The notes below the pieces were generated by a model. That model saw only the letters and a program-made list of their open reading frames with translations, did no database searches and had not been told where the DNA came from. Below, one piece after another: positions 15,001-62,773 of a stretch of DNA of 64,000 nt. The position numbers were made by a program, and so were the translations under genes. Within the stretch, counting starts at the first letter, position 1. Each line of letters opens with the position of its first letter. The stretch covers positions 186,001-250,000 of the IMG/VR virus record IMGVR_UViG_3300037882_001770; one strand, written 5' to 3'.

Positions 15001-15597
15001 ATGCCAAATTTAGTACCCATTGTAGTAGAACAAACCAGCAAAGGCGAACGCAGTTACGATATATATAGTAGACTGCTGCGTGATCGTATTGTAATGCTAG
15101 ATACAGACGTAAACGAGCATACTGCCAGTTTGATAGTGGCTCAGTTGCTGTTTTTAGAAGCAGAAGATCCAGAGCGCGATATTATTTTTTACATCAACAG
15201 CCCAGGTGGCGTAGTCACGGCAGGTATGGCAATTTACGACACTATGAACTTTATTCGCCCGGATGTAAGCACAGTGGTCATGGGCCAGGCATGTAGCATG
15301 GGAAGTTGTTTAGCTCAGGCTGGCGCCGCAGGTAAACGATTTATTTTGCCAAATGCACGTCATATGATTCACCAACCTTCGGGCGGTGCCAGAGGACAAG
15401 CAACAGATATTCAGATTCAAGCACAAGAAATACTCAAAATGAAAAAATACTTAACAGAGATCTATGTCAAGCACAACACTGCTGGCAAAACCTTTGAGCA
15501 GTTGACCGCAGACATGGAACGCGACAACTTTATGAGTGCTGAAGAAGCAGTGGCCTATGGCTTGGCTGATCAGATTATAACTCGACGCGATGCCTAA
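15001..15597 (+). CDS. clpP: ATP-dependent Clp protease proteolytic subunit
   Basis: [46 protein letters not shown]. Confidence 0.97.
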
Positions 15598-16897
15598 TCA
15601 GCAGGTATTTTGCAACACCCCGTGGTATGAATTACATATCTATTGGGACGGTGGCTTTGGTATTTGTTGTCAAGAAAGCCACCGATTGTATAAAGATTCC
15701 ACACAGTACAACATTGCCAACATGAGCATTATGGAATGGTTTAATAGCCAACCTGTGCGAAAATTCAGAACAGACATACTGGGTGACAGTAAAATATCTG
15801 AGTGCCAGCGTTGTTATATTGAAGAACGACACGGCGGCAACAGTCGTAGATTAAAAAGTAATTTAAAAAGCGTTATCTTTACACGTCAGGCCTTTGATGA
15901 AAGTTTTAAACAAAGTCCAGGATATCCGATATTTTCAACCAACGACCAAACTCAAGGCTACACCACGACCCATCCGATTGATCTGCATGTTGACCTAGGA
16001 AACTACTGTAACTTGGCCTGTAAAATGTGCCATGCACAGGCCAGTAGCACAATTGCAAGCCAAGAAGTAAAATGGGGCATTGCCGAAAGCAAACAGTATC
16101 TTGGTACCGACTGGACCAGAAATCCGCAGGTATGGCAATCGTTTAAACAGCAGTTGTTGGAAATACCAAATTTAAAGAATATACACTTCATGGGCGGCGA
16201 AACTCTACTGACCAATCAATTTGAAGATCTAGTGGACTGGTTGACCGAACATCGACGATTTGAAGTGTGTTTTAGTTTTGTGACCAATGGTACAGTGTTT
16301 AAACCAACACTAATCGACAAACTTAAAAAGTTTCAGCGAGTGGGCATAGAAATCAGTATAGAATCTGTAGATGAACACAATGCTTATCAACGTCAGGGCA
16401 CCGATACTGCTCTGGTACTAGCCAACATCAAACAATATCAAACACACTGCAACAACACCAGCATCACCGTGGCATTACGTCCAGCACCTAGCGCATTGAC
16501 CATTGGCTACTATGTGGGATTATTGCAGTTTGCACTAGACAATCAGTTGGTGGTCAAAAGCAATCTGTGTTACGAGCCAAGATTCTTAAATGCAGAAATA
16601 TTACCTGACAAAACAAAATTGCTTTACCAGTCATATTATCAAGAATTTTTAACACAATTTGCCGATGTACAGGCCAATATCGATTACAATGCCAGCGACT
16701 TGAATAACTATCGATTAATCATCAAAGAACATGCAGAAATGTGCCTGGCCATATTGCAAACCCCGGAGCCCAACGATTATCAACATCAAATTGAATGTCT
16801 GGTCAATCACTGTAGAAAATGGGATGATATTTACGGATACGATGCACGAGTATTATATCCTGAATTAACTGAAATATTGGATCTTTATGGCTATTGA
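15590..16897 (+). CDS. radical SAM protein with N-terminal SPASM/Twitch-like domain
   Basis: [16 protein letters not shown]; N-terminal C..PW...CC...C..C. Confidence 0.9.
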
Positions 16898-17339
16898 TTA
16901 TTCTGTAGTAATAGATATTCATTTACGATCAATATGGCATGATAATCCGCCCGAGATTAATATTGGTATTAATGATGACATCAATAGAATAATATTAACT
17001 GACAATCGAGTATTCCATTATGATTTTACTGCTTCTGAAACTTCAGTATTAACTGTGGAATTATTAAACAAAACCGACACCGATACTGTCGATGGATTAG
17101 ATAAGGCAGTTGTAATAGAATCGGTTGATTTTTTTGGAATATCCGATCCAAAATTTTCCTGGGCCGGAATATACAAGCCCGATTACCCCGAACCCTGGGC
17201 AAGTCAACAAACAGACTTAAAACCGTTGTTAAAAAGCCACACTTATTTGGGCTGGAATGGTAAGTGGACACTGACATTTGATGTGCCTGTGTTTACATGG
17301 GTACACAGGGTGCAAAATCTGGGTTGGATTTACGGTTGA
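16887..17339 (+). CDS. hypothetical protein
   Basis: 150-aa ORF overlapping the radical SAM gene end. Confidence 0.75.
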   Translation: MAIDYSVVIDIHLRSIWHDNPPEINIGINDDINRIILTDNRVFHYDFTASETSVLTVELLNKTDTDTVDGLDKAVVIESVDFFGISDPKFSWAGIYKPDYPEPWASQQTDLKPLLKSHTYLGWNGKWTLTFDVPVFTWVHRVQNLGWIYG

Positions 17340-17364
17340 CCAGAAATGTCCGATTTGTTATACT
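17336..17364 (+). promoter_or_regulatory. sigma70-type early promoter
   Basis: TTGACC-N17-TATACT then AAGGAG; the -35 contains the upstream TGA stop. Confidence 0.85.
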
Positions 17365-17393
17365 AGTTCTATAGTAAACAAAAAGGAGCCGAA

Positions 17394-17801
17394 ATGAAAG
17401 ACGCAATTATATACGCAGGTTACAGTCGTGACAAAGCAGGCAAGATGCGTTTCCGTACTGCCACAACCCAAAAGCGTGTTGAACAATTAGAAGCACTAGG
17501 TGAAGAAGTTCACATGCGTATCATCAACGATGTTTACAGCAAGTCAGCGGCTGCCAAGGAATTACTCCGTTTGGATCATGCCAATGGTGCCAAAGAGCTT
17601 GAAGCATTTTATGCCGCACAAGTTCGTGACGAGAATCCGTTTAAAAAGACCACTAGTTTAGTCAAAGTAAAGGTTCCTACTAAGTTTATGGCACAAATGA
17701 CAGGTGCCCGCGTTGAAGTAGAAAAAATGAGTGTAAAAGAAGCGGCCCGGATCCGTGCCGAGTTCAATGCAAAGGTCAAAGCGGCTTACGAGGCCAACTA
17801 A
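17394..17801 (+). CDS. hypothetical early protein, probable paralog of 45776..46105
   Basis: AG....G..K/R.R.A...R...L...G N-terminal pattern. Confidence 0.75.
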   Translation: MKDAIIYAGYSRDKAGKMRFRTATTQKRVEQLEALGEEVHMRIINDVYSKSAAAKELLRLDHANGAKELEAFYAAQVRDENPFKKTTSLVKVKVPTKFMAQMTGARVEVEKMSVKEAARIRAEFNAKVKAAYEAN

Positions 17802-17802
17802 T

Positions 17803-18501: not shown

Positions 18502-18507
18502 CAGAAA

Positions 18508-18789: not shown

Positions 18790-18798
18790 GGAGCAGGT

Positions 18799-19678: not shown

Positions 19679-20347
19679 TCTCAAAAAGTAATAATTTCTC
19701 TGTATCTGTTCTTGATTAAGCTGATCAGTATATAAAAGCATGTTGGCCACGTAGCCGAATGGTTGTCCTGGAATTTGACCTGTATAGTCGTGAGCATTAC
19801 CAGCCACTGTTCGAACTGTGGTTCCTACCTGTTCACCGTTGATGTAAAATGTTTGTCCTGAGCTGTTGCCGGTTACTGCCCACTGAACCCAGACGTTGGC
19901 TAGAGCACTTACATCGTTGTATCCTGAGGGATAAAATGCACTTGTACCATTGTCATACATGCCCAGGCGATTAGAACCAATTTCAATTATGATAGCGTGG
20001 TCATCTGGATTGGATCTAAACAAGGTTCTCCAACTGGTAGTACTAGCGATCATTCTTGCCCACACAATATAAGTAAATCCTGTTGTAGGAAGAGTAGGAG
20101 TGGCACTAGCGGCTCGAATGTTATAGGTGTTGGTACAATCCCAACACTTAACTCCCGACAATACTGTATAGGCAGCAGCATTGGATAAATTTTGTGTGCG
20201 ACCGTTCCCTGACAGATCTGTAATTGTAGTGCCTGATCCGGGATAACTGGCAACATTGTCGGCGTCAATCCATATGGCCATATTGTCGGCTGTAATACCA
20301 GCATCGAATATTTGTGTTCCGCGGAGTGTTACACCTGATATGATCAT
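19661..20347 (-). CDS. LamG/concanavalin A-like lectin domain protein (fibre-associated)
   Basis: DA.N..SYPGSGTT..DLSGNG; YINGEQV; L...QIQRNY....RFGV; ATGA-coupled to fibre gene. Confidence 0.8.
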   Translation of the reverse strand: MIISGVTLRGTQIFDAGITADNMAIWIDADNVASYPGSGTTITDLSGNGRTQNLSNAAAYTVLSGVKCWDCTNTYNIRAASATPTLPTTGFTYIVWARMIASTTSWRTLFRSNPDDHAIIIEIGSNRLGMYDNGTSAFYPSGYNDVSALANVWVQWAVTGNSSGQTFYINGEQVGTTVRTVAGNAHDYTGQIPGQPFGYVANMLLYTDQLNQEQIQRNYYFLRSRFGV

Positions 20348-23300
20348 ACCAATCTTTCGATAGTGATCATATTGTTGTTGTAGTCGGTACCAACGATCAA
20401 CGATATTCTCCAAGAAATAGCATTGGCTGTGTCCATGATTACCCAGGTGTCTGTGGCTCCTGCTGTAGCAAAATTGATGTTAGCGTCTAGATACGTAGGA
20501 GTCGTAGTAATGCTCACCGGTGTTTGCCCGGTGATAGTTGTGCTACTGACACTGTTTTCAACCCGAGTGTCGCTGCCAAACACGCTGTATGTTCCTGTTA
20601 CAGTTGACAGTTGTAAGCTCACGTTACCGGTGGCTGGTATTCTGGCTTTTAGATTGTCCAAGGTGACATCAACTCCACGATTGACCAAACCGCTGGCTTT
20701 GAACTGTAGTTCACCGCCTACACCCGCAGGTGCTTTGGACAAATCGATGTACACGCCTCTAGTATTACCACCGCTTTCAAAAAATCTAAGTTTATCAACA
20801 TATTGATCAACAACAACAGTGTTACCCGACAATGTGCTGTTGGCTGCTTGAGTAAAAGAAATTTCTCCGCCTTCATTACCGCTACTGCCTGTTGGCAATG
20901 TTAGCATACCGGTGTTGTCAAACACATAAGAATAACTACCAGCAACCAATGTGACATTTGGTTGTGTGCCTATCACATTGCCAGTGATATTGATGTTGCC
21001 AACAAAGTTAGCGGCTGTAATGTTACCAGTGGCAGTGATAGAATTGCCCACTGCGATGTTTTCTACAGTGAGTCGATTCTGTGCAGGATTGTAGGTGATA
21101 TTGGCTGTGCCATCAGCAGCCTTGATGCCAAGATTGCCGGTGTTGGCCACCAGCAGGGCTGGCACATATTCTTGATTTAACAACACGCTCGACACTGTAA
21201 CAGTGTTGGCCAAGGTAGCTTCGGACACAGCACCTGTGACATTGGCACCGATGATGGAAGTCAATGTGGAACCATTACCGACGAAGTAGTTGCCGGTGAT
21301 GTTGCCAAGCACGCTGAAGGGAACGTTTTGTACCTTTACGAGCACGTTACTCACTAGAAGATTGTTGTTGCCACCGGCACCAATGTTTACAGTATTGCCA
21401 GGACTCGGTGCAAAGATATTTGTAACCGTTAGGTTTGTAGTGTCAACATTGAGTATATCTCCTGTTGTTCCTTGAATGTTACCGACAAAATTAGCGGCTG
21501 TGATGTTGCCAGAGAATGTAGCACCTGCTCCATTAATGTTGCCTGACGCTGTGATATTGCCTGTGGCGCCCACAGTCGAAATTGAGCTAAATCCTGACAG
21601 ACTCGGAGCAGGACTTGCACCTGATCCTACCAAACTACCAGTAAGAACAATATTGCCTGTGGCAATCAAGTTGCTAGCAGTGACATTGCCAATAGCACTG
21701 ATATCGCCGGGAGCAGAAAGATCTCCGCTGGTGTCAAACGTCCAGCTCTCTGTGTTGGCAGTTATGACCGCATTAGATTGTGTGAATATCAATCCAAAGT
21801 CCGGATTCAAAGAAATGTTTCCATAGTCAGCATTGATATTTCTAGCTGTTACAGCCAAGCCTTCAATGGACTGGGTTGTGGTAATGTTGCCCGGAGCAGT
21901 CAAGTTGCCAGTGGTGTCAAATGTCCAGCCTGTGTTTCCAGCATCAGTGTATACGGATACATTGGAGTTAGCATAGATCTCAGCATCACCAGTGTTGTTC
22001 AAAAACAAGCCAGTAGCATCACTGGCACCAGCACTGAATCTCACTCCAGTGTTGCCCGCGGGCAGTATTTGGCTATTGCCCGGCAATGTAAGGGTGCCAT
22101 TGTTATCAAACAACCATGACTGAGTGTTGGCAGTGATAGCAACGTTGCCGGCTGATGGTCCTACAATATCATTGGTATAGACATTGCCTGATACGTTGAG
22201 ATTGATAGGAACTGAAAGATCTCCAAACTGACTGAAAGTAAAAGTATACGTGGCAGTGCCAGTGTTGGAAGTATTGATAGTGAAGTCGTTGTCTAGGCCG
22301 CCGTATATGGATGCTTGACTTCTAGGGAAAATCAAGGTACCGGTGTTGTCAAACACCCATTCATAAGTAGGAGCACCGATGGATAATGACCCGGCACCGA
22401 TCTCCACGTTGCCGGCATCGTTGTGCAGGCGTGTGTCGGTAACGTTGGCTGTGTCATTGGTAGGCAGTTGCAAGAATGCCCAACCTTCTGGGTCAGGGCT
22501 GATGTTGATCAGTGTGTCTGTGGCCCCATTGGCTATACTTATTTCTGTACCATAGATTGCAAGGTTACCAATGTTGGCTTCGCCGGTGTTGCTGGTTACA
22601 ACAACATCATCACCGTTGACTGTGAGTATATTGCCAGCAGTTAAACTTATTGGTACATTGTTCATGTAAATGGTAGCGTTTGATATGTACAAATCGTTCC
22701 ATTGATTCGTACTATTACCCAAACTATATGTGTTTGAAGTAGCCGGAATAATGTTTCCGGCCCAACCCACTTGTCCATATGCTACTGCATTGGCATTGGC
22801 ATAGTTTGAAACCCCAGTAAGTTGACTACCATCACCAATGAAATATCCGCCTGGACTTGCTACAATATTGGCAAAACTAGTGATTTCACCAACAGCATTT
22901 ATTTCTCCACTTATTCCAATATTTCCGCCAGCAATATTTCCAGAATATGTTGGCAAATATACAGCAACATTGCTATTACCGTACATACCAGTGAGCTGAC
23001 TACCATTACCTATAAAGTATGCGGCTGTAATATTTCCCGACGCACCGACAGTTTCGGACAAGATATCACCGTGGACCTCTAGGCCATCTTCGATGTTTAC
23101 AAAAGTAGAATCATCTGAACTGATATTGTTAACTATGAGATTGTTGACTGCAATATCTGGAGTTTCTAGGCCAATGTTCATTGTCCATGTGTTTGAACTT
23201 GCACTGTACAGCATTATGGCTATGTTATCATTGGCGCCCACTGTGATACCTGACCCATTGGCCGCATTAGCGGTGCTGGCTGTGTTGGCCAGCTGTATAG

Positions 23301-23724
23301 TTTTGGCATCGGTGATCAAGTTACCAATTTGTATGGTATTACCGGTCACTGTTAGGTTGCCGCTGACACTCAGATCAGCTACACTAAATGTTCCTGCGAG
23401 ATCTAAGTTTCCAGAAATGTTAGCATATTGTATGTACAACGAACTCCAGCGTTGTGTGCCGGATCCCAAGTTACGAATATTTGATGTGTTCGGAACAATG
23501 CTGACATTTGATTGTACTACTCCAATACCGTTGGGAGCCAAGACCAAGTTTCCATTGGTGTTAGTGGTCAAGATGGTATTGTTGGCAATTTGCACGTTGC
23601 TCAATACTGGACCAGCAGCGAAAATCTGATTGAAATTCAGGTTAGTTTCGTTAAACGCGGTTCTTAAAGGGTCGCCAGTACCATCATTTGGTAGTGCGCC
23701 GATGTTGATTACATACTGTGTCAT
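20344..23724 (-). CDS. tail fibre / baseplate-attached fibre protein
   Basis: N-terminal INIGALPNDGTGDPLRTAF..TN.NF attachment motif; GN-rich repeats and W.FD.TG.L..P repeats; TAAATA promoter upstream. Confidence 0.85.
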   Translation of the reverse strand: MTQYVINIGALPNDGTGDPLRTAFNETNLNFNQIFAAGPVLSNVQIANNTILTTNTNGNLVLAPNGIGVVQSNVSIVPNTSNIRNLGSGTQRWSSLYIQYANISGNLDLAGTFSVADLSVSGNLTVTGNTIQIGNLITDAKTIQLANTASTANAANGSGITVGANDNIAIMLYSASSNTWTMNIGLETPDIAVNNLIVNNISSDDSTFVNIEDGLEVHGDILSETVGASGNITAAYFIGNGSQLTGMYGNSNVAVYLPTYSGNIAGGNIGISGEINAVGEITSFANIVASPGGYFIGDGSQLTGVSNYANANAVAYGQVGWAGNIIPATSNTYSLGNSTNQWNDLYISNATIYMNNVPISLTAGNILTVNGDDVVVTSNTGEANIGNLAIYGTEISIANGATDTLINISPDPEGWAFLQLPTNDTANVTDTRLHNDAGNVEIGAGSLSIGAPTYEWVFDNTGTLIFPRSQASIYGGLDNDFTINTSNTGTATYTFTFSQFGDLSVPINLNVSGNVYTNDIVGPSAGNVAITANTQSWLFDNNGTLTLPGNSQILPAGNTGVRFSAGASDATGLFLNNTGDAEIYANSNVSVYTDAGNTGWTFDTTGNLTAPGNITTTQSIEGLAVTARNINADYGNISLNPDFGLIFTQSNAVITANTESWTFDTSGDLSAPGDISAIGNVTASNLIATGNIVLTGSLVGSGASPAPSLSGFSSISTVGATGNITASGNINGAGATFSGNITAANFVGNIQGTTGDILNVDTTNLTVTNIFAPSPGNTVNIGAGGNNNLLVSNVLVKVQNVPFSVLGNITGNYFVGNGSTLTSIIGANVTGAVSEATLANTVTVSSVLLNQEYVPALLVANTGNLGIKAADGTANITYNPAQNRLTVENIAVGNSITATGNITAANFVGNINITGNVIGTQPNVTLVAGSYSYVFDNTGMLTLPTGSSGNEGGEISFTQAANSTLSGNTVVVDQYVDKLRFFESGGNTRGVYIDLSKAPAGVGGELQFKASGLVNRGVDVTLDNLKARIPATGNVSLQLSTVTGTYSVFGSDTRVENSVSSTTITGQTPVSITTTPTYLDANINFATAGATDTWVIMDTANAISWRISLIVGTDYNNNMITIERLV

Positions 23725-32992: not shown

Positions 32993-33200
32993 GTTTCTAT
33001 ATCATTGCACAATACCCTGGATTGATCAAACCAATCCTATGTATTATTGGGACACATTGTGTGCCAATGCTATAGAATTATTTGGACTTCCGGGAGATAG
33101 GTACATAACCGATATAAGCGAGCACTCAATGACCTGGAGTTTTTGCAACCAACATGACGCATTACTTTTTAAATTAAAATTTGGGGAAACATGTCAGTAA
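32952..33200 (+). CDS. small protein, F-x-F-xxx-D-A-xx-F-x-L-x-W family (start may be TTG 32979)
   Basis: W...CA.AIE.FGLPG.RY...WSFCNQHDALLFKLKF. Confidence 0.65.
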   Translation: MMITYGNTTLREPKFLYHCTIPWIDQTNPMYYWDTLCANAIELFGLPGDRYITDISEHSMTWSFCNQHDALLFKLKFGETCQ

Positions 33201-33823
33201 ACGACGAAATCATTCGTGTAACTCCAATACCAGAATATTTCAACATCACATGGATGCTAGGATCTAGATGCAACTACGATTGTATGTATTGTCCGGCCGA
33301 ATTGCACGATGCTACAAGTCGGCCACACGATTTAGAAACCATGCAAAAGGCGTGGATAAACATACACTCTAAAACAACTAATAAAAACTTGCCTTACAAA
33401 ATTAGTTTCACTGGCGGTGAAGTAACTGCCAATAAAAACTTTTTATCATTGGTTGGGTGGTTAAAATCCAACTACTCTGAAATTGGAATGATATTAACGA
33501 CCACTAACGGCAGCGCCAGTAAACGTTATTACGAACAGTTGAGTCAATCAATTGATTCGATCAGCTTTAGCACTCACAGTGAGTTTATGAACGAAGCAGA
33601 ATTTTTTGACAAGGTGTTGGCAACAGATCGGTTGATGCTACGTCCAGAAAAAAGTGTTCATGTTAACATCATGGACGAATATTGGAATCAGTCACGCATA
33701 CAAATATACAAAGAATTCTTAGAAAAACACAGTATCAGTTATAGCATAAACACAATCGATTACACTAGTAAAATTAGAGAAAACATTTTGAATAACGGAG
33801 TACAAAATCTTGTCGTCACTTGA
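33191..33823 (+). CDS. radical SAM protein (core domain only)
   Basis: CNYDCMYC, FTGGEVT, TNGS, SFSTHSE. Confidence 0.9.
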   Translation: MSVNDEIIRVTPIPEYFNITWMLGSRCNYDCMYCPAELHDATSRPHDLETMQKAWINIHSKTTNKNLPYKISFTGGEVTANKNFLSLVGWLKSNYSEIGMILTTTNGSASKRYYEQLSQSIDSISFSTHSEFMNEAEFFDKVLATDRLMLRPEKSVHVNIMDEYWNQSRIQIYKEFLEKHSISYSINTIDYTSKIRENILNNGVQNLVVT

Positions 33824-34115
33824 AAATCATATCAACTACAACTGCGAGGTCGAAACCGTTCAGGGAAAAACATATCAAATATATGCCAACTGGCTACACA
33901 ACCATGGCCTTGACCACTGGCAGGGCTGGCACTGTTCGGCCGGCAACACACGCTTATATATTGATAAAGATCTAGTGGTGCACAGTGGAATGTGTCTGAA
34001 CGATACCCTTGGCTCTGCGCTAGACGGGTTTGATCTATTAGAACACGCTATATGTCGGCAATCTACTTGTACTGGATGTACCGATGATCTGGTCATTTCT
34101 AAACATAAATTATGA
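33810..34115 (+). CDS. stand-alone SPASM/Twitch-like Fe-S domain
   Basis: GWHCSAG...L.I..D.......C..D.LG....C....C..C.DD; GGAG RBS 33797. Confidence 0.7.
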   Translation: MSSLENHINYNCEVETVQGKTYQIYANWLHNHGLDHWQGWHCSAGNTRLYIDKDLVVHSGMCLNDTLGSALDGFDLLEHAICRQSTCTGCTDDLVISKHKL

Positions 34116-34519
34116 ATACTAATTTTTATTTTGCTTACGGTGCCAATATGCATCCAGGACATATGCAATTTCGTTGCCCAGCGGCTCAAGCGGTAGGCGC
34201 ATTCACATTGAGAAAGTGGGAACTTAAATTTTATAGTCATGCTACAATTGAACCTAATCCTCAAGCTACGGTTGCTGGGGTTTTATGGAAAATCACCAAC
34301 GACTGCGAGTCAAGCCTTGATATGTTTGAGGGATACCCCAGTTATTATACCAAACGTACTTGGATACAAGACGAAACTCAGTTTTTCTTTTATGAGATGA
34401 CCGCACCTAAGTCGGGTAGGCCCAGTGAAGGTTATGTGCTAGACATTGCAGAAAGTTATAAGTTCTGGCAATTACCTCAAAATTTATTAATTGAATCTTT
34501 GCATGACACTATTGCGTAG
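34112..34519 (+). CDS. gamma-glutamylcyclotransferase (AIG2-like)
   Basis: YFAYGANM....M..RCP.A; V.GVLW; LD.FEG.P..Y; PS..Y. Confidence 0.85.
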   Translation: MNTNFYFAYGANMHPGHMQFRCPAAQAVGAFTLRKWELKFYSHATIEPNPQATVAGVLWKITNDCESSLDMFEGYPSYYTKRTWIQDETQFFFYEMTAPKSGRPSEGYVLDIAESYKFWQLPQNLLIESLHDTIA

Positions 34520-40180: not shown

Positions 40181-40237
40181 GGTCGACACAGTGAGTAAAT
40201 CACTGTATAATTGTTTTTTTATAAAGGAGAAGTAAAG

Positions 40238-40678
40238 ATGGCAAAATCAGTAAAAGGTACCAAAACAGAACACGCATTGAAAGATGCGTTTGCAGGTGAA
40301 AGCAAAGCCAACCGCCGTTATTTGTATTTCGCAAACATGGCTGACGTAGCAGGCGCACCAGATGTTGCGGCAGTATTCCGTTCCACCGCTGAAGGCGAAA
40401 CAGGTCATGCACACGGCCATATGGAGTACTTGATCACAGGTGGTGCAGGCGATCCTGAAACAGGTCTTCCAGCTGGTTCAGTCAAAGAAGCTTTAGAAAG
40501 TGCTATCGCAGGCGAGACACACGAGTACACCGACATGTACCCAGGCATGGCTAAGACAGCCCGCGACGAAGGCTTTGACGAAATCGCTGACTGGTTTGAG
40601 ACTTTGGCTAAGGCTGAGCGTAGCCACGCAAACAAGTTCACCAAGACTTTGGCGGCTCACTTAGAAGACATCAAGTAA
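40238..40678 (+). CDS. rbr: rubrerythrin (di-iron domain only)
   Basis: [38 protein letters not shown]. Confidence 0.93.
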
Positions 40679-42374: not shown

Positions 42375-42477
42375 GTTTGCCACCGAATCTGAATGTGTGC
42401 GGGCTCAGTCCACTGTGCAGTCGTGGTTGAAATTTGATTCTTTTCGAGTGATTACCAAATGTCAAAAACAATCTTAG
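42304..42477 (+). CDS. 57-aa exported protein with Cys pair (not in ORF track)
   Basis: AAGGAG RBS at about 42291; MWILILLAV...F.TE.EC..A......C. Confidence 0.6.
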   Translation: MWILILLAVNINNPNDVPGRVSIEFATESECVRAQSTVQSWLKFDSFRVITKCQKQS

Positions 42478-43466
42478 TAATAACCGACAATGTTCCAGAT
42501 CAAATCAACGGTGTGGTCACAACTTTCAAAAACCTGGAAAGTCACGCTGTTGACGCTGGGCATTGTGTTGTTTATCTTGATCCCTCTCAGTTTCCTCATT
42601 GTGCTTGCCCTGGGTATCCTGAAGTTCAACTCTGCTGGCCACACGGCATTAGCACGAAGATTAAGGCGATACAGCCGTCGTATATTCACATTGCCACCGA
42701 AGGCCCAGTAGGCCTATTTGCTCGCTGGTGGTGTGAGCGAAATCACATTCCCTACAATACCAGTTATCACACCGACTTTGCCAAGTTTCTAAAGAAAATG
42801 TATCGTGTGCCTGAGTCCGTGACCTGGTGGTATCTGCGTTGGTTTCACAAGAACAGTCACAGGGTGCTGGTTACAACAGAAAGCATACGGCAAGACTTGT
42901 TGACTCGTGGATTCGCCAATCTGCGTGTGTGGACTCGAGGAGTAGACCGAACCATATTTAACAGCACTCATCGTGGTGAAACTGTGGCAGGCGGTCCGGT
43001 ACTGTTAAGTGTTGGTCGGGTAAGTGTTGAAAAAGGCCTAGATGATTTTTGCCGATTAGACATTCCAGGCGCCACCAAAATTGTAGTTGGGGACGGTCCA
43101 TATAGACAAGAATTACAACGCCGGTATCCTGATATCGTTTTTGTGGGAAGTAAACAAGGAACCGACTTGGCTCGGTATTATGCTCAAGCCGATGTGTTTG
43201 TTTTTGCCAGTCGTGCTGACACTTTTGGTGTGGTCAACATTGAAGCATTGGCCTGCGGAACCCCGGTTGCGGCCTATCCTGTTGCAGGACCCAAGGATAT
43301 TGTTGAGCCTGGACTTACCGGATTCTTAAACAACAATTTACAATTAGCAGTGCAACAGTGCTTGACTCTGGATCGTGCGGCGGTAGAAACAGCCAGCCTA
43401 CAATGGACCTGGGCAGAATGTTGGCGTATATTTGAGGACAATCTAGTAGACTGTTCTGTTGCCTAA
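42459..43466 (+). CDS. GT4 glycosyltransferase (Agt/MgtA-like lipid glycosyltransferase)
   Basis: TD...QINGVV.T, HIATEGP.G, SYHT.F, W.RGVD, VGRVS.EK, DTFG.V..EALACGTPVAAYP. Confidence 0.92.
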   Translation: MSKTILVITDNVPDQINGVVTTFKNLESHAVDAGHCVVYLDPSQFPHCACPGYPEVQLCWPHGISTKIKAIQPSYIHIATEGPVGLFARWWCERNHIPYNTSYHTDFAKFLKKMYRVPESVTWWYLRWFHKNSHRVLVTTESIRQDLLTRGFANLRVWTRGVDRTIFNSTHRGETVAGGPVLLSVGRVSVEKGLDDFCRLDIPGATKIVVGDGPYRQELQRRYPDIVFVGSKQGTDLARYYAQADVFVFASRADTFGVVNIEALACGTPVAAYPVAGPKDIVEPGLTGFLNNNLQLAVQQCLTLDRAAVETASLQWTWAECWRIFEDNLVDCSVA

Positions 43467-49216: not shown

Positions 49217-49251
49217 TGCATAAGTACTTGTCAAGGAGATAATAAACACAA

Positions 49252-49470
49252 TTGAGTAAAGAAGACGTCATTAAGATGGAAGGTATTATATCAGAAGTTC
49301 TGCGCAATACCACATACCGAGTTCAAATCGAAAACTTTGAAAAAACTGTACTTGCTACGTTAAATGGCCGTATGCGACAGAACAATATCAAAGTACTAGC
49401 CGGAGACGTAGTCGAGCTAGAATTTAGCCCGTACGATTTAACTCGCGGCAGAATTACAAGAAGGCGCTAA
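49252..49470 (+). CDS. infA: translation initiation factor IF-1
   Basis: KEDVI.MEG.I.E.L.N...RV; G.MR.N.I.VL.GD.V..E.SPYDLTRGRI..R. Confidence 0.95.
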   Translation: MSKEDVIKMEGIISEVLRNTTYRVQIENFEKTVLATLNGRMRQNNIKVLAGDVVELEFSPYDLTRGRITRRR

Positions 49471-50604
49471 ATGAGTTCTTGGTATTGTGCTTTACCTTTT
49501 AAACATGTGTTTGTGGACAGTACAGGACTTAGTCCTTGTTGCAATACCGTCGGACAATTTGGGCTTGACGTCAGTATAGACGAATACAAATCACATCCTA
49601 AGTTACTAGAATTACAAAAACAATTTCTTGATGGGCGCACTCCTGCTGCATGCTCTGTTTGCTTGCACCAAGAAAAAATTCAAAACAAAAGTATGAGAAT
49701 AGACAGTAATATTGACTACAATCATCGGGTGTTTGATTCTACCGAGTTTGATTTTATACACCTTAGTCAAAGTAACTTGTGTAATTTCAAATGCCGCAGT
49801 TGTAGTCCAAGATACAGCCACGGAATAGTTCAAGAACACAAAAAATATCCCGAATTGTTTGCGGACGCACCTCAACAAAAATTCGTCGAAGTCAATCCTG
49901 ACAATTATAAATGGATTATTAAAAATTTATCAAGTATTAAAAGACTTTTAATAACCGGCGGAGAGCCCACAGTAATGCCAGAAATAAGACATTTGTTTGA
50001 ATTTTTGTTGCAAACACCGCGGCCGCAACCACAACCGTATATTATGATGACAACCAATTGTAGCTGGACTGATAATTTTTGGTATCAAGCAATTGACGGT
50101 ATGTCTAATTTGCATATCACAGCTAGTGTAGATGCAGTAGGAGATGCTGCGCAACTAATAAGACACGGTACTGTTTGGAATCAGGTAGAGCGCAACGTGA
50201 AGTGGTTAGCCCAGCATGCCTCGAGTTTTGATATCAATACGGTAATTAGCAATTTAAATATAAACCATCTTTATGATTTACTTCAATTCTGCAGACAAGA
50301 ACAAATAGCCTCCAAAGTAGAAAATGGAGGGAAACAGGGAGATTTGGGACTACGGCATCAATTTACTATAGCTAACGGTGTCAATGAGATTACCTGTTTT
50401 CCGGATGATCTAAAAACAAAAACACTAAAACATTTGGATCAGTGCCTTGCATTGGATCTAGATCCAGACCAACTGAAATTGATCAAGGGGTTAATTGTAA
50501 CTGTTCAAAATAGTACATACAATCATCAAAAATGGCAAAGTATTGTAGAATATCAAACCAAACTTGATCAAATTCGTGGTGAAAACCATTTGAAACTACT
50601 CTAA
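49471..50604 (+). CDS. radical SAM protein with N-terminal Twitch-like domain
   Basis: C.LPF..PCC..C..C; CNFKCRSC; TGGEP; TN. Confidence 0.9.
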   Translation: MSSWYCALPFKHVFVDSTGLSPCCNTVGQFGLDVSIDEYKSHPKLLELQKQFLDGRTPAACSVCLHQEKIQNKSMRIDSNIDYNHRVFDSTEFDFIHLSQSNLCNFKCRSCSPRYSHGIVQEHKKYPELFADAPQQKFVEVNPDNYKWIIKNLSSIKRLLITGGEPTVMPEIRHLFEFLLQTPRPQPQPYIMMTTNCSWTDNFWYQAIDGMSNLHITASVDAVGDAAQLIRHGTVWNQVERNVKWLAQHASSFDINTVISNLNINHLYDLLQFCRQEQIASKVENGGKQGDLGLRHQFTIANGVNEITCFPDDLKTKTLKHLDQCLALDLDPDQLKLIKGLIVTVQNSTYNHQKWQSIVEYQTKLDQIRGENHLKLL

Positions 50605-50615: not shown

Positions 50616-51158
50616 ATGCGCAAACATATCGATCTTGTAGAAGCAACTACCCGCCCGGCTAAGTTGGAAACTACTCCGTTGCCGTATGGTGAACAGGACC
50701 TAGAACCAGTGATGAGCCAAGCAACCATTGGCTATCACTACGAGCACCTGGCTAAGGGCTATGCCAAACGCTACAATGCCGGTGAAGGCAATGCTGATTT
50801 TAACCGTGCTGGATCATTTTTACATAATAAATTTTTTCCGCAACTAAAAGAACCCAAAGGTGCAAACCGCCCAAAAGGTGCTGTATTAGAACTTATAGAA
50901 ACAAACTTCAAAACGTACGAAGACTTTAAAGCAGAATTTAAAAAGGTGGCCATGTCTGTGCAAGGGTCCGGATGGGTATATCTCTCTACATCGGGCACTA
51001 TCAAAACCATCCCAAATCATCAGGTTAGAACGGATATCTGTGTTCTTGTTGACTGGTGGGAACACGCTTGGGCACTAGATTATCAATGGGACAAAGAGAA
51101 ATATCTAGATAATATTTGGAAAATAATCAACTGGGACGTGTGTAACGAAAGAATATGA
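50616..51158 (+). CDS. sod: Fe/Mn superoxide dismutase
   Basis: LPY....LEP; YHY; FLHN; GSGWVYL; DWWEHA; INW. Confidence 0.88.
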
Positions 51159-51481
51159 TAACTATAAGCGAAACTGCAATAGCAAAACTGCAAGATATTT
51201 TAATCGAGGAAAACAATCCCGATCTTAAATTACGTGTATTTGTTCAAGGTGGTGGCTGTAGCGGAATGAGCTATGGTTTTACCCTGGACGAAGTTCAAAA
51301 TGAAGACGATTGGGATCTGGAAATTTCCGGTGTAAAAGTCCTAGTAGATTCAATGAGTGGTGGCTATTTACAGGGTGCCGAAGTGGATTACAAAGAGGAC
51401 AATTACGGCAGTAGCTTTACCATCAAAAATCCAAACGCACAAACAACCTGCGGTTGCGGCAGCAGTTTTAGTCCCACCTAG
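51155..51481 (+). CDS. erpA: A-type Fe-S carrier ErpA/IscA
   Basis: [16 protein letters not shown]; VDSMS..YL.GA.VDY; [12 protein letters not shown]. Confidence 0.93.
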
Positions 51482-59366: not shown

Positions 59367-59393
59367 ATACACCCATATTATTAAGGAAATATT

Positions 59394-59867: not shown

Positions 59868-59875
59868 GAGGAATT

Positions 59876-60277
59876 ATGATTAAACCAGCATTTGCTCCAC
59901 ATAAAATTCAGCAGAAACAATTACAAGCTATTAAAAAAGATATCATTGTTACCGATATGGAATTTGCTGAACGATTTACCGCCAACGGATTGATACTGCC
60001 ATCTGACAATGGCACTAGCCTGGGCATTAGACCGCGCTGGGGTAAAGTGTATGCAGTCGGTTCAGACCAGCAAGATGTATCAGTAGGACAATGGGTATGT
60101 GTGGCACACGGCCGCTGGACTCGCGGCCTGGACATTGAGGATGAAACTGGCAAGCGTACTATTCGCAAAATTGACCCAAACGATCTACTGTTGGTGTCTG
60201 ACGAAAAGCCCATGGATATGACCATGAGCAGTGCTATACACGTAGGAAAGAAACCCGCTGATCAACTGCATGATTAA
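59876..60277 (+). CDS. groES: GroES-like co-chaperonin
   Basis: T..GLILP.D; G.V.AVG....V.VG.WV.V; D.LLV. Confidence 0.75.
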   Translation: MIKPAFAPHKIQQKQLQAIKKDIIVTDMEFAERFTANGLILPSDNGTSLGIRPRWGKVYAVGSDQQDVSVGQWVCVAHGRWTRGLDIEDETGKRTIRKIDPNDLLLVSDEKPMDMTMSSAIHVGKKPADQLHD

Positions 60278-60280
60278 ACC

Positions 60281-60502
60281 ATGGGTTTCAAAAAACCAAA
60301 TCTAAATGAAGCCAACTGGGCTATACGTACAGCACTGACCGAAATTCACAGTCCGTTAAATGATGGATTTATTCAAAGTAGTTGCAAACACGAGTTATAC
60401 ATGTTAAAATGTTGGCTAAACGACGAATATGACAAACTTCCAATATTTGTTGGGGAAGAACTATGGGAACAAGAACGAATAGTACAGATACTGAAAAAGT
60501 AA
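60281..60502 (+). CDS. hypothetical protein
   Basis: SP.NDGF....CK..LY.LK....P.F.GEE.W. Confidence 0.7.
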   Translation: MGFKKPNLNEANWAIRTALTEIHSPLNDGFIQSSCKHELYMLKCWLNDEYDKLPIFVGEELWEQERIVQILKK

Positions 60503-60663
60503 AACCTTCAAAATGTAGTTTGTGTAATCAAGAGTATACCCCTGTGTGTGATTATCGGCAAGGACGATGTCCACATCATTCCAGCTGGTTAGATAATATT
60601 TTATCTGATCCATACAAGTCAAGATTTTACAATTTACTTAAATTTTTAAAAGGCAACAAATGA
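60463..60663 (+). CDS. small Cys/His (zinc-binding?) protein
   Basis: C..C......CDY.QGRCPH; ATGA coupling to clamp loader. Confidence 0.55.
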   Translation: MGTRTNSTDTEKVKPSKCSLCNQEYTPVCDYRQGRCPHHSSWLDNILSDPYKSRFYNLLKFLKGNK

Positions 60664-61580
60664 AAGAACTTTGGGTAGAAAAATATAGACCTAATACTAT
60701 AGACGGTTACGTATTTCGCGACACCGCTCAGCGGGAACAAATTGAAAGCTGGATCAAGGATCGAGCAATTCCACATTTGATATTCAGTGGCAATGCTGGC
60801 ATTGGAAAAACAACACTGGCTAAGATTTTGATCAATCAGCTCGAAATAAACGAATATGATCTATTGGAAATCAATGCCAGTCGAACCAACAGTGTTGACG
60901 ATGTTAGAGTAAAGATTCAGACCTTTGTAGAAACAATGCCCTTTGGCGACTTCAAAATTGTGTTGTTAGACGAAGCAGATTATCTAAGCCCTAATGCTCA
61001 AGCCGCACTTCGAGGAGTTATGGAAACCTATGCGCATACAGCCAGATTTATTTTAACCTGTAACTACCCAACCAAGATTATTCCGGCACTACACAGTCGC
61101 TGTCAGGGCTTTCACATTGAACGTGTTGACATGACTGAATTTACTGCTCGAGCAGCTACAGTGCTGGTTGAAGAATCAATTGAATTTGACCTAGATACCC
61201 TAGATACCTATGTCAAGGCTGCTTATCCAGACCTGCGCAAATGTTTAAATACCTTGCAAATGAATAGTTCGTCGGGTAAACTGTTGGTCCCCAGTGGCGA
61301 TGCCGGCAGTACAGGCGACTGGAAACTGTCGGCAGTTGAATTGTTTAAAGAAGGGCGGATCAATGACGCTCGCAAACTGATGTGTAGTCAAGCTCGGCCC
61401 GAGGAAATGGAAGATGTATTCCGTTGGATGTACGACAACTTGTCGTTATGGAGCAAGGACACCGAAAAGCAAGATCAAGCAATTATTATCATTCGTAACG
61501 GCTTGGTGAATGTGCCAATGGTGGCGGATCAGGAGATCAATCTATCAGCAACTATCACGGAACTTTGCCAGTTGCAATGA
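60660..61580 (+). CDS. sliding clamp loader subunit (RFC/gp44-like AAA+)
   Basis: LWVEKYRP, GNAGIGKTT, INAS, LLDEAD, SRC, DLRK. Confidence 0.95.
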   Translation: MKELWVEKYRPNTIDGYVFRDTAQREQIESWIKDRAIPHLIFSGNAGIGKTTLAKILINQLEINEYDLLEINASRTNSVDDVRVKIQTFVETMPFGDFKIVLLDEADYLSPNAQAALRGVMETYAHTARFILTCNYPTKIIPALHSRCQGFHIERVDMTEFTARAATVLVEESIEFDLDTLDTYVKAAYPDLRKCLNTLQMNSSSGKLLVPSGDAGSTGDWKLSAVELFKEGRINDARKLMCSQARPEEMEDVFRWMYDNLSLWSKDTEKQDQAIIIIRNGLVNVPMVADQEINLSATITELCQLQ

Positions 61581-62773
61581 AAAAGGTAATACCGATACAG
61601 ACAGATCGTGATTATTATTGTTCAAATAAATTTACTTTTTTAAAAATTGATTTTGAAAAACAAACCACGTATAATTGTCATGCAGCCACACCCCATCCAA
61701 TTGATTTTGTCTGGTTAGAAAATAATCCTGGGCAATTGTTTAATACGCCAATCAACATGTCTGAACGTGAGTTGATGTTGGATAATCAACGTAACCCTAG
61801 TTGTGAACAAAACTGCTATCCAGCCGAAGATCGTGGCCAGGTCAGTACTCGAATGTTACAGTCTACTCCGGATCGTCAATACACTGATGTTCTAACTCAC
61901 CCCAAGCTGGTGGACTTTACACTGTTTAGTGAATGCAACCTTACCTGTAGTTATTGTTGCAAAGAATACAGCAGTGCCTGGCGCAATGACTTGTTAAAAA
62001 ACGGATCGTATGATCTGCCAAATTACGCCAATCAAAATCGCATGAAATTGTTGCCTATAGATATTGTGTCTGGTAAGGTAAGTCAAAAAGAAAAAGCAAA
62101 TTTGCCTAAGATAAAATTGCTATTGGAGCAAGTTTACAACAGTCGAGAACATCTTGAAATTTTAACCATCACCGGCGGGGAGCCATTTCTAAACAATCTG
62201 CTACCAGAGATATTAGAAAAATTTAAAACAGTTCCTAGAATTGATTTGTTTACTGGTCTTGGAGTTAACACCGAACGATTTAAAAAAATATTATCTGTGG
62301 TATCACAATACAAAAATATCAACTTGTGCATCAGTGCCGAATCTACAGAAAAAAATTACGAGTTTAACCGCTACGGCATGACTTGGCAAAATTTTCAAGA
62401 ACGATTAAAAATTATTCAAGATCTTGGAATCAAATTTGAATTCCACTGCACTATCTCTAATCTTACAGTGTTAGGGTTCAAGGACTTTTATAAACTCTAC
62501 AAAGATGTCAAACTACATATAGACTTTGTGCATCACCCCGATTTTATGTCAGCCAGCAACTTAGATCCTGCATCCAAACAACAAGTCATAGATGATTTAT
62601 TGCCATATCAAGACGATGTAAAAATCCAACAGATATTACAAACCGTAATCAGCGATCATGTAAATAACGATCATAGGGTAACTATGGCCACGTGGCTAGA
62701 GCAGTTTGCTAGTCGTCGACAACTTGATTTAAATTTATACCCAAAAACTTTTTTAGATTGGCTAAAACAATGA
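61577..62773 (+). CDS. radical SAM protein with N-terminal Cys cluster
   Basis: C..KF...CH...SCEQNC; CNLTCSYC; TGGEP. Confidence 0.9.
   Translation: MKKVIPIQTDRDYYCSNKFTFLKIDFEKQTTYNCHAATPHPIDFVWLENNPGQLFNTPINMSERELMLDNQRNPSCEQNCYPAEDRGQVSTRMLQSTPDRQYTDVLTHPKLVDFTLFSECNLTCSYCCKEYSSAWRNDLLKNGSYDLPNYANQNRMKLLPIDIVSGKVSQKEKANLPKIKLLLEQVYNSREHLEILTITGGEPFLNNLLPEILEKFKTVPRIDLFTGLGVNTERFKKILSVVSQYKNINLCISAESTEKNYEFNRYGMTWQNFQERLKIIQDLGIKFEFHCTISNLTVLGFKDFYKLYKDVKLHIDFVHHPDFMSASNLDPASKQQVIDDLLPYQDDVKIQQILQTVISDHVNNDHRVTMATWLEQFASRRQLDLNLYPKTFLDWLKQ

What the first reader, a model, noticed from the sequence alone, without database searches (positions are those of the whole stretch)
15590..62773. Four scattered radical SAM/SPASM-Twitch enzymes plus an Fe-S carrier
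Seen: CxxxCxxC enzymes at 15590, 33191, 49471 and 61577; three carry an auxiliary Cys cluster N-terminal to the core instead of C-terminal, and three sit directly behind conserved genes (clpP, infA, clamp loader). ErpA is also encoded. Known: SPASM/Twitch enzymes modify peptides, proteins and sugars. Inference: an unknown multi-enzyme modification programme (virion glycan/protein or DNA) with phage-supported Fe-S supply.
Basis: partly seen in the sequence, partly recalled or inferred. Interest (0 to 1): 0.6.

Follow-up and report, generated by a model that had tools for sequence, protein, structure and literature searches.

The report
Radical SAM enzyme expansion in jumbo phage
An uncultured 317-kb phage carries 14 radical SAM enzymes, 11 of them from one uncharacterised family with its extra iron-sulfur domain at the front, plus its own iron-sulfur carriers and oxidative-stress enzymes; they most likely tailor a phage-made sugar polymer, but no substrate is shown.

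Summary
All four ORFs carry CxxxCxxC and match radical SAM models. Three (15590, 49471, 61577) match NCBIfam NF033640, the N-terminal-twitch radical SAM family; the third scores just under its cutoff. The fourth (33191) is a 210-aa core-only enzyme. The window lies in a 317-kb uncultured phage with 11 NF033640 paralogs, six of them in one island, and three other radical SAM genes. A relative at about 50% identity has 12 copies and the same island.

The paralogs are old and distinct, at 16-25% identity, each with closer kin elsewhere.

ErpA is real. It lies in a conserved run of IF-1, radical SAM, superoxide dismutase and ErpA. An IscA-like carrier and a rubrerythrin are also encoded.

The island also holds GT10-like glycosyltransferase candidates, a carbamoyltransferase and a sugar epimerase/dehydratase. 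Elsewhere the family is interleaved with, and once fused to, GT2 transferases. Glycan tailoring is therefore the best-supported role at about 45%, and it is inferred.

Radical-SAM-rich phages with Fe-S carriers were reported in 2010 and 2017, so this is a new variant of a known kind.

The parts
15590..16897 (+). N-terminal-twitch radical SAM enzyme (P0001, 435 aa). Its start overlaps the clpP stop by 8 nt.
   Evidence: NF033640 236 bits against cutoff 170. Pfam SPASM matches residues 8-76 and Radical_SAM 136-288. AF2 model pLDDT 91.5. More than 1,800 homologs, the best 120 at 66-90% identity, some on contigs up to 352 kb. Same synteny in three relatives examined.
33191..33823 (+). Small core-only radical SAM enzyme (P0002, 210 aa) with no auxiliary Cys domain.
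   Evidence: CNYDCMYC motif. No family reaches its cutoff; best is viperin-like at 45 bits against 180. 1,256 homologs at 62-94% identity. The run 93 aa, rSAM, 101 aa, GGACT is conserved in a relative. The nearest cultured-phage hit is a CP220 radical SAM gene at 28% identity.
49471..50604 (+). N-terminal-twitch radical SAM enzyme (P0003, 377 aa), second gene of the IF-1, rSAM, SOD, ErpA run.
   Evidence: NF033640 223 bits. The four-gene run is conserved in relatives whose rSAM is 66% and 36% identical.
61577..62773 (+). Divergent N-terminal-twitch-like radical SAM enzyme (P0004). The ORF opens at TTG 61565; ATG 61577 overlaps the clamp-loader stop by 4 nt.
   Evidence: NF033640 164-165 bits, just under 170. 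The N-terminal pair is CxxxC instead of CxxC.
49249..49470 (+). Translation initiation factor IF-1 homolog (infA). Its stop codon abuts the P0003 start.
   Evidence: TIGR00008 90.9 bits against cutoff 61. PF01176 68 bits. Junction read.
50616..51158 (+). Divergent Fe/Mn superoxide dismutase (180 aa).
   Evidence: Sod_Fe_C 80.8 bits. The DWWEHAW ligand motif is present. It scores only 72 bits against the Fe-SOD equivalog.
51155..51481 (+). ErpA, an A-type Fe-S cluster carrier, overlapping the SOD stop by 4 nt.
   Evidence: NF010147 ErpA 150.8 bits against cutoff 117. Cys35, Cys99 and Cys101 are present. PF01521 73.6 bits.
15001..15597 (+). ClpP proteolytic subunit, directly upstream of P0001.
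   Evidence: PF00574 269 bits. NF001368 316 bits against cutoff 249.
12796..13371 (+). Second, divergent ClpP-like subunit.
   Evidence: PF00574 97.8 bits. Both ClpP genes are kept in relatives.
60660..61580 (+). AAA+ clamp-loader subunit (gp44-like), directly upstream of P0004.
   Evidence: AAA, DNA_pol3_delta2 and Gp44_lid hits.
40211..40678 (+). Rubrerythrin-like protein, a possible peroxide defence.
   Evidence: PF02915 89.7 bits. Also present in a relative.
1025..2335 (-). 'Family X' member, a candidate GT10-like GT-B glycosyltransferase. It is a paralog of three genes in the radical SAM island.
   Evidence: Alignment A2 shows a conserved ET...TEKTFKPI...GFKTFG...FDESYD block. Best fold matches are GT10 FUT11 (Z 7.1) and FUT9 (Z 6.5), and nearly all others are GT-B transferases, but the model is poor at pLDDT 47. 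Language-model look-alikes are GT10 at 0.78. No Pfam or PDB sequence hit.
2339..3586 (+). UDP-glucose/GDP-mannose dehydrogenase family enzyme.
   Evidence: PF00984 and PF03721. A paralog lies at genome 295725-296498.
4073..4996 (+). Unknown 307-aa protein, paralog of an island gene (genome 16866-17885).
   Evidence: Self-BLAST clustering. No Pfam hit.
42459..43466 (+). GT4 glycosyltransferase.
   Evidence: Glyco_trans_1_4, Glycos_transf_1 and Glyco_transf_4.
33810..34519 (+). Unknown 101-aa protein followed by a GGACT/AIG2-like cyclotransferase, directly downstream of P0002.
   Evidence: PF06094 41.8 bits. Same order in a relative.
16887..17339 (+). Unknown 150-aa protein overlapping the P0001 stop, conserved in relatives.
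   Evidence: No Pfam or PHROG hit. A 147-150-aa gene sits at the same place in relatives.

Best explanation
Shown:
- The four ORFs are genuine radical SAM enzymes.
- Three belong to NF033640. In this family a four-Cys Twitch domain, homologous to the C-terminal twitch of BtrN, sits before the SAM-cleaving core, so each enzyme should hold two [4Fe-4S] clusters.
- They are three of 11 ancient, mutually distant paralogs in a 317-kb uncultured jumbo phage. Six of the 11 form an island at genome 18-31 kb.
- The copy number and the island architecture are conserved in a relative at about 50% protein identity.

Inferred:
- The paralogs are tailoring enzymes of a phage-encoded glycan or glycoconjugate pathway.
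- Each performs a distinct radical step on a sugar or nucleotide-sugar, such as oxidation, epimerisation, deoxygenation or decarboxylation. BtrN, DesII and BlsE do such chemistry.
- They act alongside GT10-like transferases, a carbamoyltransferase, SDR epimerase/dehydratases, UDP-sugar dehydrogenases and a GT4.
- The product would decorate the virion or remodel the infected cell's envelope.
- ErpA, an IscA-like carrier, a superoxide dismutase and a rubrerythrin load and protect the roughly 25 oxygen-sensitive clusters in an aerobic host. Sulfur mobilisation and reductant come from the host.
- The 210-aa enzyme works in a separate small operon with a GGACT-like cyclotransferase. Its substrate is unknown.
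For: Identity and family.

Expansion.

Conservation:
- More than 1,800 homologs of P0001 and 1,256 of P0002.
- Relative G002 (316 kb, 91% complete) has 12 copies over the cutoff.
- Its island holds six rSAM genes, six family-X genes and the carbamoyltransferase.

Ancient, distinct paralogs:
- They are 16-25% identical to each other, but 40-51% identical to proteins on unrelated contigs.
- They are dispersed on the family tree: 9 label changes, at least 7 forced by well-supported branches.

Glycan context in this phage:
- carbamoyltransferase;
- SDR at genome 10443-11168 beside the island, and three more elsewhere;
- two UDP-sugar dehydrogenases;
- GT4;
- five family-X genes with GT10/GT-B fold leads.

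Glycan context elsewhere:
- an 18-kb contig with nine rSAM genes, four GT2 genes and one rSAM-GT2 fusion;
- rSAM next to a sugar isomerase;
- rSAM in an operon ending in a UDP-sugar dehydrogenase;
- family X beside rSAM arrays.

Fe-S support: and the same reading in PMC5332604.
Against: - No substrate is shown.
- Solved-structure neighbours tie between sugar or nucleotide enzymes (BlsE, viperin, DesII, MoaA) and peptide maturases (anSME, CteB, SkfB, SuiB) at Z 12-14.
- The three window copies are not adjacent to recognisable sugar genes. They sit behind clpP, infA and a clamp loader.
- A bacterial island with seven rSAM genes shows no Pfam glycosyltransferase within 21 kb.
- The GT10 assignment of family X rests on a low-confidence model, middling Z scores and a sub-threshold language-model score. 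The Pfam GT10 model finds nothing.
- No base rate for sugar genes near random phage genes was computed.
Confidence: 0.45

Rival explanations
1. The enzymes are peptide or protein maturases. Either they modify a ribosomal peptide, as in RiPP pathways, or they modify phage or host proteins, possibly the products of the genes they follow (ClpP, IF-1, clamp loader, primase, helicase).
For: - SPASM/Twitch enzymes are often peptide maturases.
- CteB, SuiB, SkfB and anSME are among the best structural matches.
- Five rSAM genes start within or abutting the stop codon of a conserved gene.
- These arrangements persist in distant relatives.
- Some family members carry TPR fusions.
Against: - No precursor-like small ORF lies in or beside the island.
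- No PqqD-type recognition domain was detected.
- Overlapping starts are common in the stretches examined, and the whole neighbourhood is collinear in relatives, so adjacency carries little weight.
- The island partners are sugar-type enzymes.
Confidence: 0.2
2. The enzymes modify nucleic acids or nucleotides: DNA hypermodification, tRNA modification, or nucleotide-derived small molecules in the manner of viperin or MoaA.
For: - The weak best equivalog hits are viperin and MoaA.
- Viperin ties for the top structural match.
- Two rSAM genes flank the replicative helicase, next to the primase.
- Nearest cultured-phage hit to P0002 is a radical SAM gene of CP220.
Against: - All nucleotide-enzyme scores are 4-10 times under cutoff.
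- No TGT/DpdA or QueC is present.
- None of the neighbours examined is a recognisable base-modification gene.
- The CP220 radical SAM genes belong to another family, scoring at most 31 bits against NF033640.
Confidence: 0.1
3. The enzymes are auxiliary metabolic genes acting on lipids, cofactors or other small molecules to boost host metabolism during infection, as was proposed for CP220.
For: - A fatty-acid desaturase and a GNAT lie near P0001.
- Lipid-acting radical SAM enzymes (GDGT-MAS) appear among the structural matches.
- PMC2853527 suggests this role.
Against: - None of the 14 reference genomes has a member over the family cutoff, so no known core pathway uses this family.
- Eleven divergent paralogs conserved as a set argue for a dedicated multi-step pathway.
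Confidence: 0.1

Closest known systems
NCBIfam NF033640, 'twitch domain-containing radical SAM protein' (N_Twi_rSAM)
   Same: Two window proteins and eight more in the genome score over the curated cutoff across the full model length. They share the same N-terminal four-Cys domain, CxxxCxxC core and GGE motif.
   Different: The family has no known substrate and no solved member. P0004 falls just under the cutoff with a CxxxC variant. P0002 is not a member.
BtrN, the archetypal Twitch radical SAM dehydrogenase of butirosin biosynthesis (PDB 4M7T)
   Same: Its twitch domain aligns by sequence profile to the N-terminal domain here (E 7e-6). It acts on a sugar-like aminocyclitol.
   Different: The BtrN twitch is C-terminal; here the domain precedes the core. 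The cores are only distantly related, and shared chemistry is untested.
Marine environmental viral genomes with A-type carrier and many radical SAM genes (Nishimura et al. 2017, PMC5332604)
   Same: A phage-encoded A-type Fe-S carrier together with up to 12 radical SAM genes and ClpP, read there as virus-side Fe-S metabolism.
   Different: That example is a 183-kb T4-like genome. This one is a 317-kb lineage. The earlier work did not assign the enzymes to a family, describe the SOD/ErpA operon, or link them to glycan genes. Whether its enzymes are NF033640 members could not be tested here.
Campylobacter phages CP220 and CPt10 (Timms et al. 2010, PMC2853527)
   Same: These phages carry 11-12 radical SAM genes of unknown role, partly clustered. 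P0002's nearest cultured-phage hit is in CP220.
   Different: Their enzymes are not N-terminal-twitch type, scoring at most 31 bits against NF033640. The hosts are microaerophilic gut bacteria.
Vibrio phage K566 and K567 (cultured, about 255 kb)
   Same: K566 carries five N_Twi-like genes, four of them in one cluster with unknown partners. Two are over the cutoff and three score 133-155 bits. K567 was seen only as a matching tblastn hit with four places.
   Different: Only about 23% identical. K566 has fewer copies and none of its cluster neighbours examined matches a protein of this phage. It is useful as an experimental stand-in.

Membership tests
Radical SAM superfamily (PF04055) | CxxxCxxC motif binding the SAM-cleaving [4Fe-4S] cluster | tested here: met
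   Present in all four proteins. Invariant across 99 family members.
Radical SAM superfamily (PF04055) | Score over the Pfam gathering cutoff of 29.5 bits | tested here: met
   40.6, 41.8 and 33.9 bits for the three long proteins. P0002 scores 27.0, just under, but its 1,256 homologs carry PF04055 in the precomputed annotation.
Radical SAM superfamily (PF04055) | Partial TIM-barrel core fold | tested here: met
   The AF2 model of P0001 (pLDDT 91.5) aligns to BlsE, viperin and anSME at Z 13.6-13.8 over 200-228 residues. Not modelled for the other three.
NF033640 N_Twi_rSAM | Whole-protein score of at least 170 bits | tested here: met
   P0001 scores 236.1 and P0003 223.0. P0004 scores 164-165, just under. 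P0002 scores 18.7 and is not a member.
NF033640 N_Twi_rSAM | Cys-rich Twitch domain located N-terminal to the radical SAM core | tested here: met
   Pfam SPASM matches residues 8-76. Cys72 and Cys75 are invariant, Cys8 and Cys27 nearly so. Profile positions 8-79 match the BtrN twitch. P0004 has CxxxC in place of CxxC.
SPASM subfamily (two auxiliary clusters) | Seven-Cys motif including CX2CX5CX3C | tested here: not met
   Only four Cys are conserved in the auxiliary domain, so the domain is Twitch rather than SPASM.
   The best scores are 45 against 180 for viperin, 44 against 284 for MoaA, 39 against 131 for NrdG and 25 against 206 for QueE.
ErpA, A-type Fe-S carrier (NF010147) | Equivalog score of at least 117 bits and the three Cys ligands (C...CGC) | tested here: met
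   150.8 bits. Cys35, Cys99 and Cys101 are present.
Any two-cluster radical SAM enzyme | Two [4Fe-4S] clusters bound and reductive SAM cleavage | not testable with these tools
   Needs anaerobic purification, iron and sulfide analysis, EPR or Moessbauer spectroscopy, and 5'-deoxyadenosine assays.
GT10 fucosyltransferase-like GT-B (for family X) | Pfam PF00852 match or a confident GT-B fold | tested here: inconclusive
   PF00852 finds nothing in the genome. The AF2 model is poor at pLDDT 47. The top fold matches are nonetheless GT10 FUT11 (Z 7.1) and FUT9 (Z 6.5), followed by a list that is almost all GT-B. Language-model look-alikes are GT10 at 0.78.

The most novel reading that the evidence does not exclude
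NF033640 is a large unrecognised class of radical SAM glycan-tailoring enzymes. Arrays of them, paired with GT10-like or GT2 transferases, would build sugars with radical-installed modifications on virions or on the envelope of infected cells. A dedicated ErpA, IscA-like carrier and SOD module would keep them working in oxic seawater. The family spans about 8,500 clusters at 50% identity, many of them from marine metagenomes, so this would be widespread new carbohydrate chemistry.
Probability: 0.3. Interest if true: 0.8.

Novelty: new variant of a known kind. Interest (0 to 1): 0.55.

Why it matters
Phages with a dozen radical SAM genes have been known since 2010, and no function has been assigned. 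This work gives the puzzle a sharper form.

- In one widely sampled jumbo-phage lineage the genes belong to a single curated but uncharacterised family.
- They are old, distinct paralogs conserved as a set.
- They sit with sugar-pathway genes.
- They are linked in an operon to an Fe-S carrier and a superoxide dismutase.

The family is very large: 8,499 clusters at E <= 1e-30. It has no solved structure and no known substrate, so one characterised member would annotate thousands of proteins.

A cultured Vibrio phage with five related genes makes the question testable. If the glycan reading is right, it points to new radical carbohydrate chemistry and to a viral strategy for running oxygen-sensitive enzymes in aerobic hosts.

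Tried and rejected
- Megablast of the clpP-rSAM region against GenBank phages found nothing. tblastn found only hits at 26% identity or less.
- The search for related loci with the 11-paralog alignment failed because no stretch was conserved enough. With P0001 alone it gave two short contigs, and with P0004 none.
- Whole-record searches of the JGI and NCBI relatives were not possible because those records are not held.
- Literature searches for N_Twi_rSAM, NF033640 and 'N-terminal twitch/SPASM' found nothing. A search for the NCBIfam product name returned only general SPASM/twitch papers, whose titles did not concern this family.
- Family X has no Pfam, PHROG or PDB sequence hit, and Pfam GT10 is absent from the genome. 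Its AF2 model was poor, so the GT10 reading stays a lead.
- The other island proteins (187, 193, 308, 339 and 362 aa) stayed unannotated.
- The full maximum-likelihood tree did not finish in time. FastTree was used instead, and long-branch warnings apply.
- Rejected: the 7-deazaguanine pathway, since no TGT or QueC is present.
- Rejected: a complete phage Fe-S assembly system, since there is no cysteine desulfurase, Fer2 ferredoxin or flavodoxin.
- Rejected: recent in-genome amplification, since the paralogs are 16-25% identical and dispersed on the tree.
- Rejected: kinship of this expansion with the CP220 one.
- Complex prediction was not used, because no stable binding claim is made.
- No alternative genetic code was needed.

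Full report
**Observation.** The window has four ORFs with the radical SAM motif:
- 15590-16897, 435 aa, CNLACKMC;
- 33191-33823, 210 aa, CNYDCMYC;
- 49471-50604, 377 aa, CNFKCRSC;
- 61565/61577-62773, about 400 aa, CNLTCSYC.

Pfam Radical_SAM is over its cutoff for the three long proteins. The short one scores just under, at 27.0 against 29.5. The first protein also matches the Pfam SPASM domain across its full length at residues 8-76, ahead of the core.

NCBIfam places the three long proteins in NF033640, 'twitch domain-containing radical SAM protein'. Their scores are 236, 223 and 164 bits against a cutoff of 170. The short protein reaches no family cutoff. Its best hits are viperin-like at 45 against 180 and MoaA at 39 against 284. 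None of the four approaches the MoaA, QueE, NrdG or viperin equivalog cutoffs.

**The auxiliary domain is Twitch, not SPASM.** I aligned the 11 paralogs of this genome, and then 99 family members. Only four N-terminal Cys are conserved: Cys72 and Cys75 invariant, Cys8 and Cys27 nearly so. The core also keeps CxxxCxxC, GGE, one Ser and one Arg. A profile of the family matches the C-terminal twitch domain of BtrN with its positions 8-79 (PDB 4M7T residues 183-257, E 7e-6). No solved structure is a full-length member.

An AlphaFold model of the first protein is confident (pLDDT 91.5). Its core aligns equally well to BlsE, viperin, anSME, CteB, MoaA and DesII, at Z 12-14. The fold confirms the superfamily but does not pick a substrate class. 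The fourth window protein has CxxxC in place of the N-terminal CxxC, which fits its borderline score.

**Neighbours in the window.**
- clpP (15001-15597) precedes the first enzyme with an 8-nt overlap.
- An IF-1 homolog (49249-49470, TIGR00008 91 bits against 61) abuts the third enzyme.
- A gp44-like clamp loader (60660-61580) overlaps ATG 61577 by 4 nt.

infA belongs to 49471, not to 33191.

Downstream of 49471 lies a divergent Fe/Mn superoxide dismutase (50616-51158) that keeps the DWWEHAW ligand motif. ErpA follows at 51155-51481, scoring 150.8 against 117 on the ErpA equivalog and carrying its three Cys.

**The genome.** The window is bases 186001-250000 of a 317,493-bp IMG/VR virus record estimated at 89% complete.
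- NF033640 matches 11 full-length genes, ten of them over the cutoff.
- Six lie on the minus strand at 17.9-30.7 kb.
- Five are scattered, and three of those are in the window.
- A motif scan and a Pfam search add three other radical SAM genes, for 14 in all. A fragment at the contig end may be a 15th.
- Self-BLAST shows this is the largest paralog family in the phage.
- One scattered copy lies between the primase and the DnaB-type helicase. A non-twitch radical SAM gene follows the helicase.

**Conservation.**
- The first enzyme has more than 1,800 homologs. The best 120 are 66-90% identical, and some lie on contigs of 312-352 kb.
- clpP, clpP, rSAM and a 150-aa gene keep the same order in three relatives examined.
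- The 210-aa enzyme has 1,256 homologs at 62-94% identity. The run 93 aa, rSAM, 101 aa, GGACT is conserved in a relative.
- The IF-1, rSAM, SOD, A-type-carrier run is kept in relatives whose rSAM is 66% and only 36% identical.
- An IMG/VR relative of 315,778 bp (91% complete; its 210-aa ortholog is 51% identical) has 12 NF033640 genes over the cutoff. They are arranged the same way, with one island of six and the rest scattered.

**The paralogs are old.** They are 16-25% identical to one another. Individual paralogs are 40-51% identical to proteins on unrelated metagenome contigs. On a FastTree of 99 members the 11 are dispersed: 9 label changes against a shuffled mean of 10.6, with at least 7 forced by well-supported branches. 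Long-branch warnings apply to that tree. This is a conserved set of distinct enzymes, not a recent amplification.

**The family at large.** A profile of the 11 paralogs finds 8,499 clusters at 50% identity with E <= 1e-30. Many are two-domain tandem fusions. One carries a GT2 glycosyltransferase fusion, and some carry TPR repeats. Many members come from Tara Oceans and other metagenomes. None of 14 reference genomes has a member over the cutoff. A Bacteriovoracaceae MAG has nine.

**Context, and why glycan is the leading reading.**

In this phage:
- The island holds a NodU/CmcH-type carbamoyltransferase and a DUF6071 protein.
- An SDR sugar epimerase/dehydratase lies just upstream, at genome 10443-11168.
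- Three island genes belong to an unannotated 'family X'. The genome has five in all, one of them in the window at 1025-2335.

The evidence on family X:
- It has a conserved ET...TEKTFKPI...GFKTFG...FDESYD block. From memory this resembles the GT10 motif; that is a lead only.
- The Pfam GT10 model and PDB sequence searches find nothing.
- Its AlphaFold model is poor (pLDDT 47).
- Even so, the best structural matches are the GT10 enzymes FUT11 (Z 7.1) and FUT9 (Z 6.5), followed almost entirely by GT-B glycosyltransferases.
- A language-model search gives GT10 clusters at 0.78. It also gives structural neighbours fused to a GDP-mannose-dehydratase-type domain.

The relative G002 keeps six family-X genes and the carbamoyltransferase in its island. 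The phage also encodes two UDP-sugar dehydrogenases, three more SDR enzymes and a GT4.

Elsewhere, family members occur:
- in an 18-kb array of nine rSAM genes with four GT2 genes;
- beside a sugar isomerase;
- in an operon ending in a UDP-sugar dehydrogenase;
- beside family-X genes.

Against this reading:
- A bacterial island of seven rSAM genes shows no Pfam glycosyltransferase.
- The three window copies are not next to sugar genes.
- No background rate was computed.

I put the glycan-tailoring reading at about 0.45.

**Fe-S support.** The phage encodes ErpA, an IscA-like second carrier (140 bits against 150.6), a superoxide dismutase and a rubrerythrin. It has no cysteine desulfurase, Fer2 ferredoxin or flavodoxin. 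The phage side therefore covers cluster delivery and protection, and the host must supply sulfur and electrons. The conserved operon link between an rSAM gene, the SOD and ErpA is the strongest evidence for this.

**Rivals.**
- Protein or peptide maturation (0.2) is suggested by the SPASM/Twitch tradition, by the peptide maturases among the fold matches, and by the position behind conserved genes. Tight packing and general collinearity weaken that last point, and no precursor-like ORF or recognition domain was seen.
- Nucleic-acid or nucleotide chemistry (0.1) lacks partner genes; no TGT or QueC is present.
- General metabolic boosting (0.1) does not explain a conserved set of 11-12 distinct enzymes absent from model genomes.

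**Known work.**
- Timms et al. 2010 reported 11-12 radical SAM genes in Campylobacter phages CP220 and CPt10. Those genes are not NF033640 members, scoring at most 31 bits.
- Nishimura et al. 2017 described marine viral genomes with an A-type carrier, up to 12 radical SAM genes and ClpP, and proposed virus-side Fe-S metabolism.
- The cultured Vibrio phage K566 has five N_Twi-like genes and could serve as a model.

Not found in the literature I searched:
- the family assignment;
- the ancient conserved paralog set;
- the island shared with GT10-like and carbamoyltransferase genes;
- the IF-1, rSAM, SOD, ErpA operon.

**Limits.** The standard bacterial code was used throughout.

Noticed in passing
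window 12796-15597: Two ClpP paralogs, one canonical and one divergent, flank an antisense gene at 13372-14949 (-). That gene varies among relatives: 525, 496 or 60 aa. This may be a phage-encoded heteromeric ClpP. PMC5332604 lists ClpP among Fe-S-related viral genes.
   Followed up: partly
window 49249-49470: A phage-encoded translation initiation factor IF-1, over the equivalog cutoff and conserved in distant relatives directly upstream of a radical SAM gene.
   Followed up: partly
genome 143375-146910 (locus L004 3375-6910): An N-terminal-twitch rSAM gene lies between the Toprim primase and the DnaB-type helicase. A second, non-twitch rSAM gene of 334 aa, with a partial C-terminal SPASM hit, overlaps the helicase stop.
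   Followed up: partly
genome 316741-317469 (-): A 242-aa ORF cut by the contig end is 26% identical to a non-twitch rSAM on contig L016 and clusters with the 334-aa rSAM at genome 145906-146910. It may be a 15th radical SAM gene.
   Followed up: no
window 20344-23724 (-) and 51546-54296 (+); genome 84716-94516: A seven-member paralog family of large proteins (up to about 1,880 aa) has two members in the window. No informative Pfam hit; they may be fibre or structural proteins.
   Followed up: no
window 7165-10453: A UvdE UV-damage endonuclease, a GNAT acetyltransferase and a fatty-acid desaturase lie in a row and are conserved in relatives.
   Followed up: no
window 33810-34519: An unknown 101-aa protein and a GGACT/AIG2-like gamma-glutamyl cyclotransferase form a conserved operon with the 210-aa radical SAM enzyme. 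The role is unknown.
   Followed up: partly
proteins P0124-P0157: Many top family hits are 800-1,400-aa proteins holding two complete N-twitch rSAM units in tandem. This suggests the enzymes act in pairs or in succession.
   Followed up: partly
locus L011/L025 and genome G001: A Bacteriovoracaceae MAG carries nine NF033640 genes over the cutoff. One island sits next to 2-oxoacid dehydrogenase genes and holds seven rSAM genes, including a B12-binding one.
   Followed up: partly
locus L023 184-2155: A distant relative of this phage encodes TctC and DctP family substrate-binding proteins, which are unusual auxiliary genes and may hint at the host.
   Followed up: no
genome rSAM genes: The scattered rSAM genes have a lower G+C content (0.36-0.40) than the genome mean of 0.427. 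The island copies are at 0.39-0.42.
   Followed up: no
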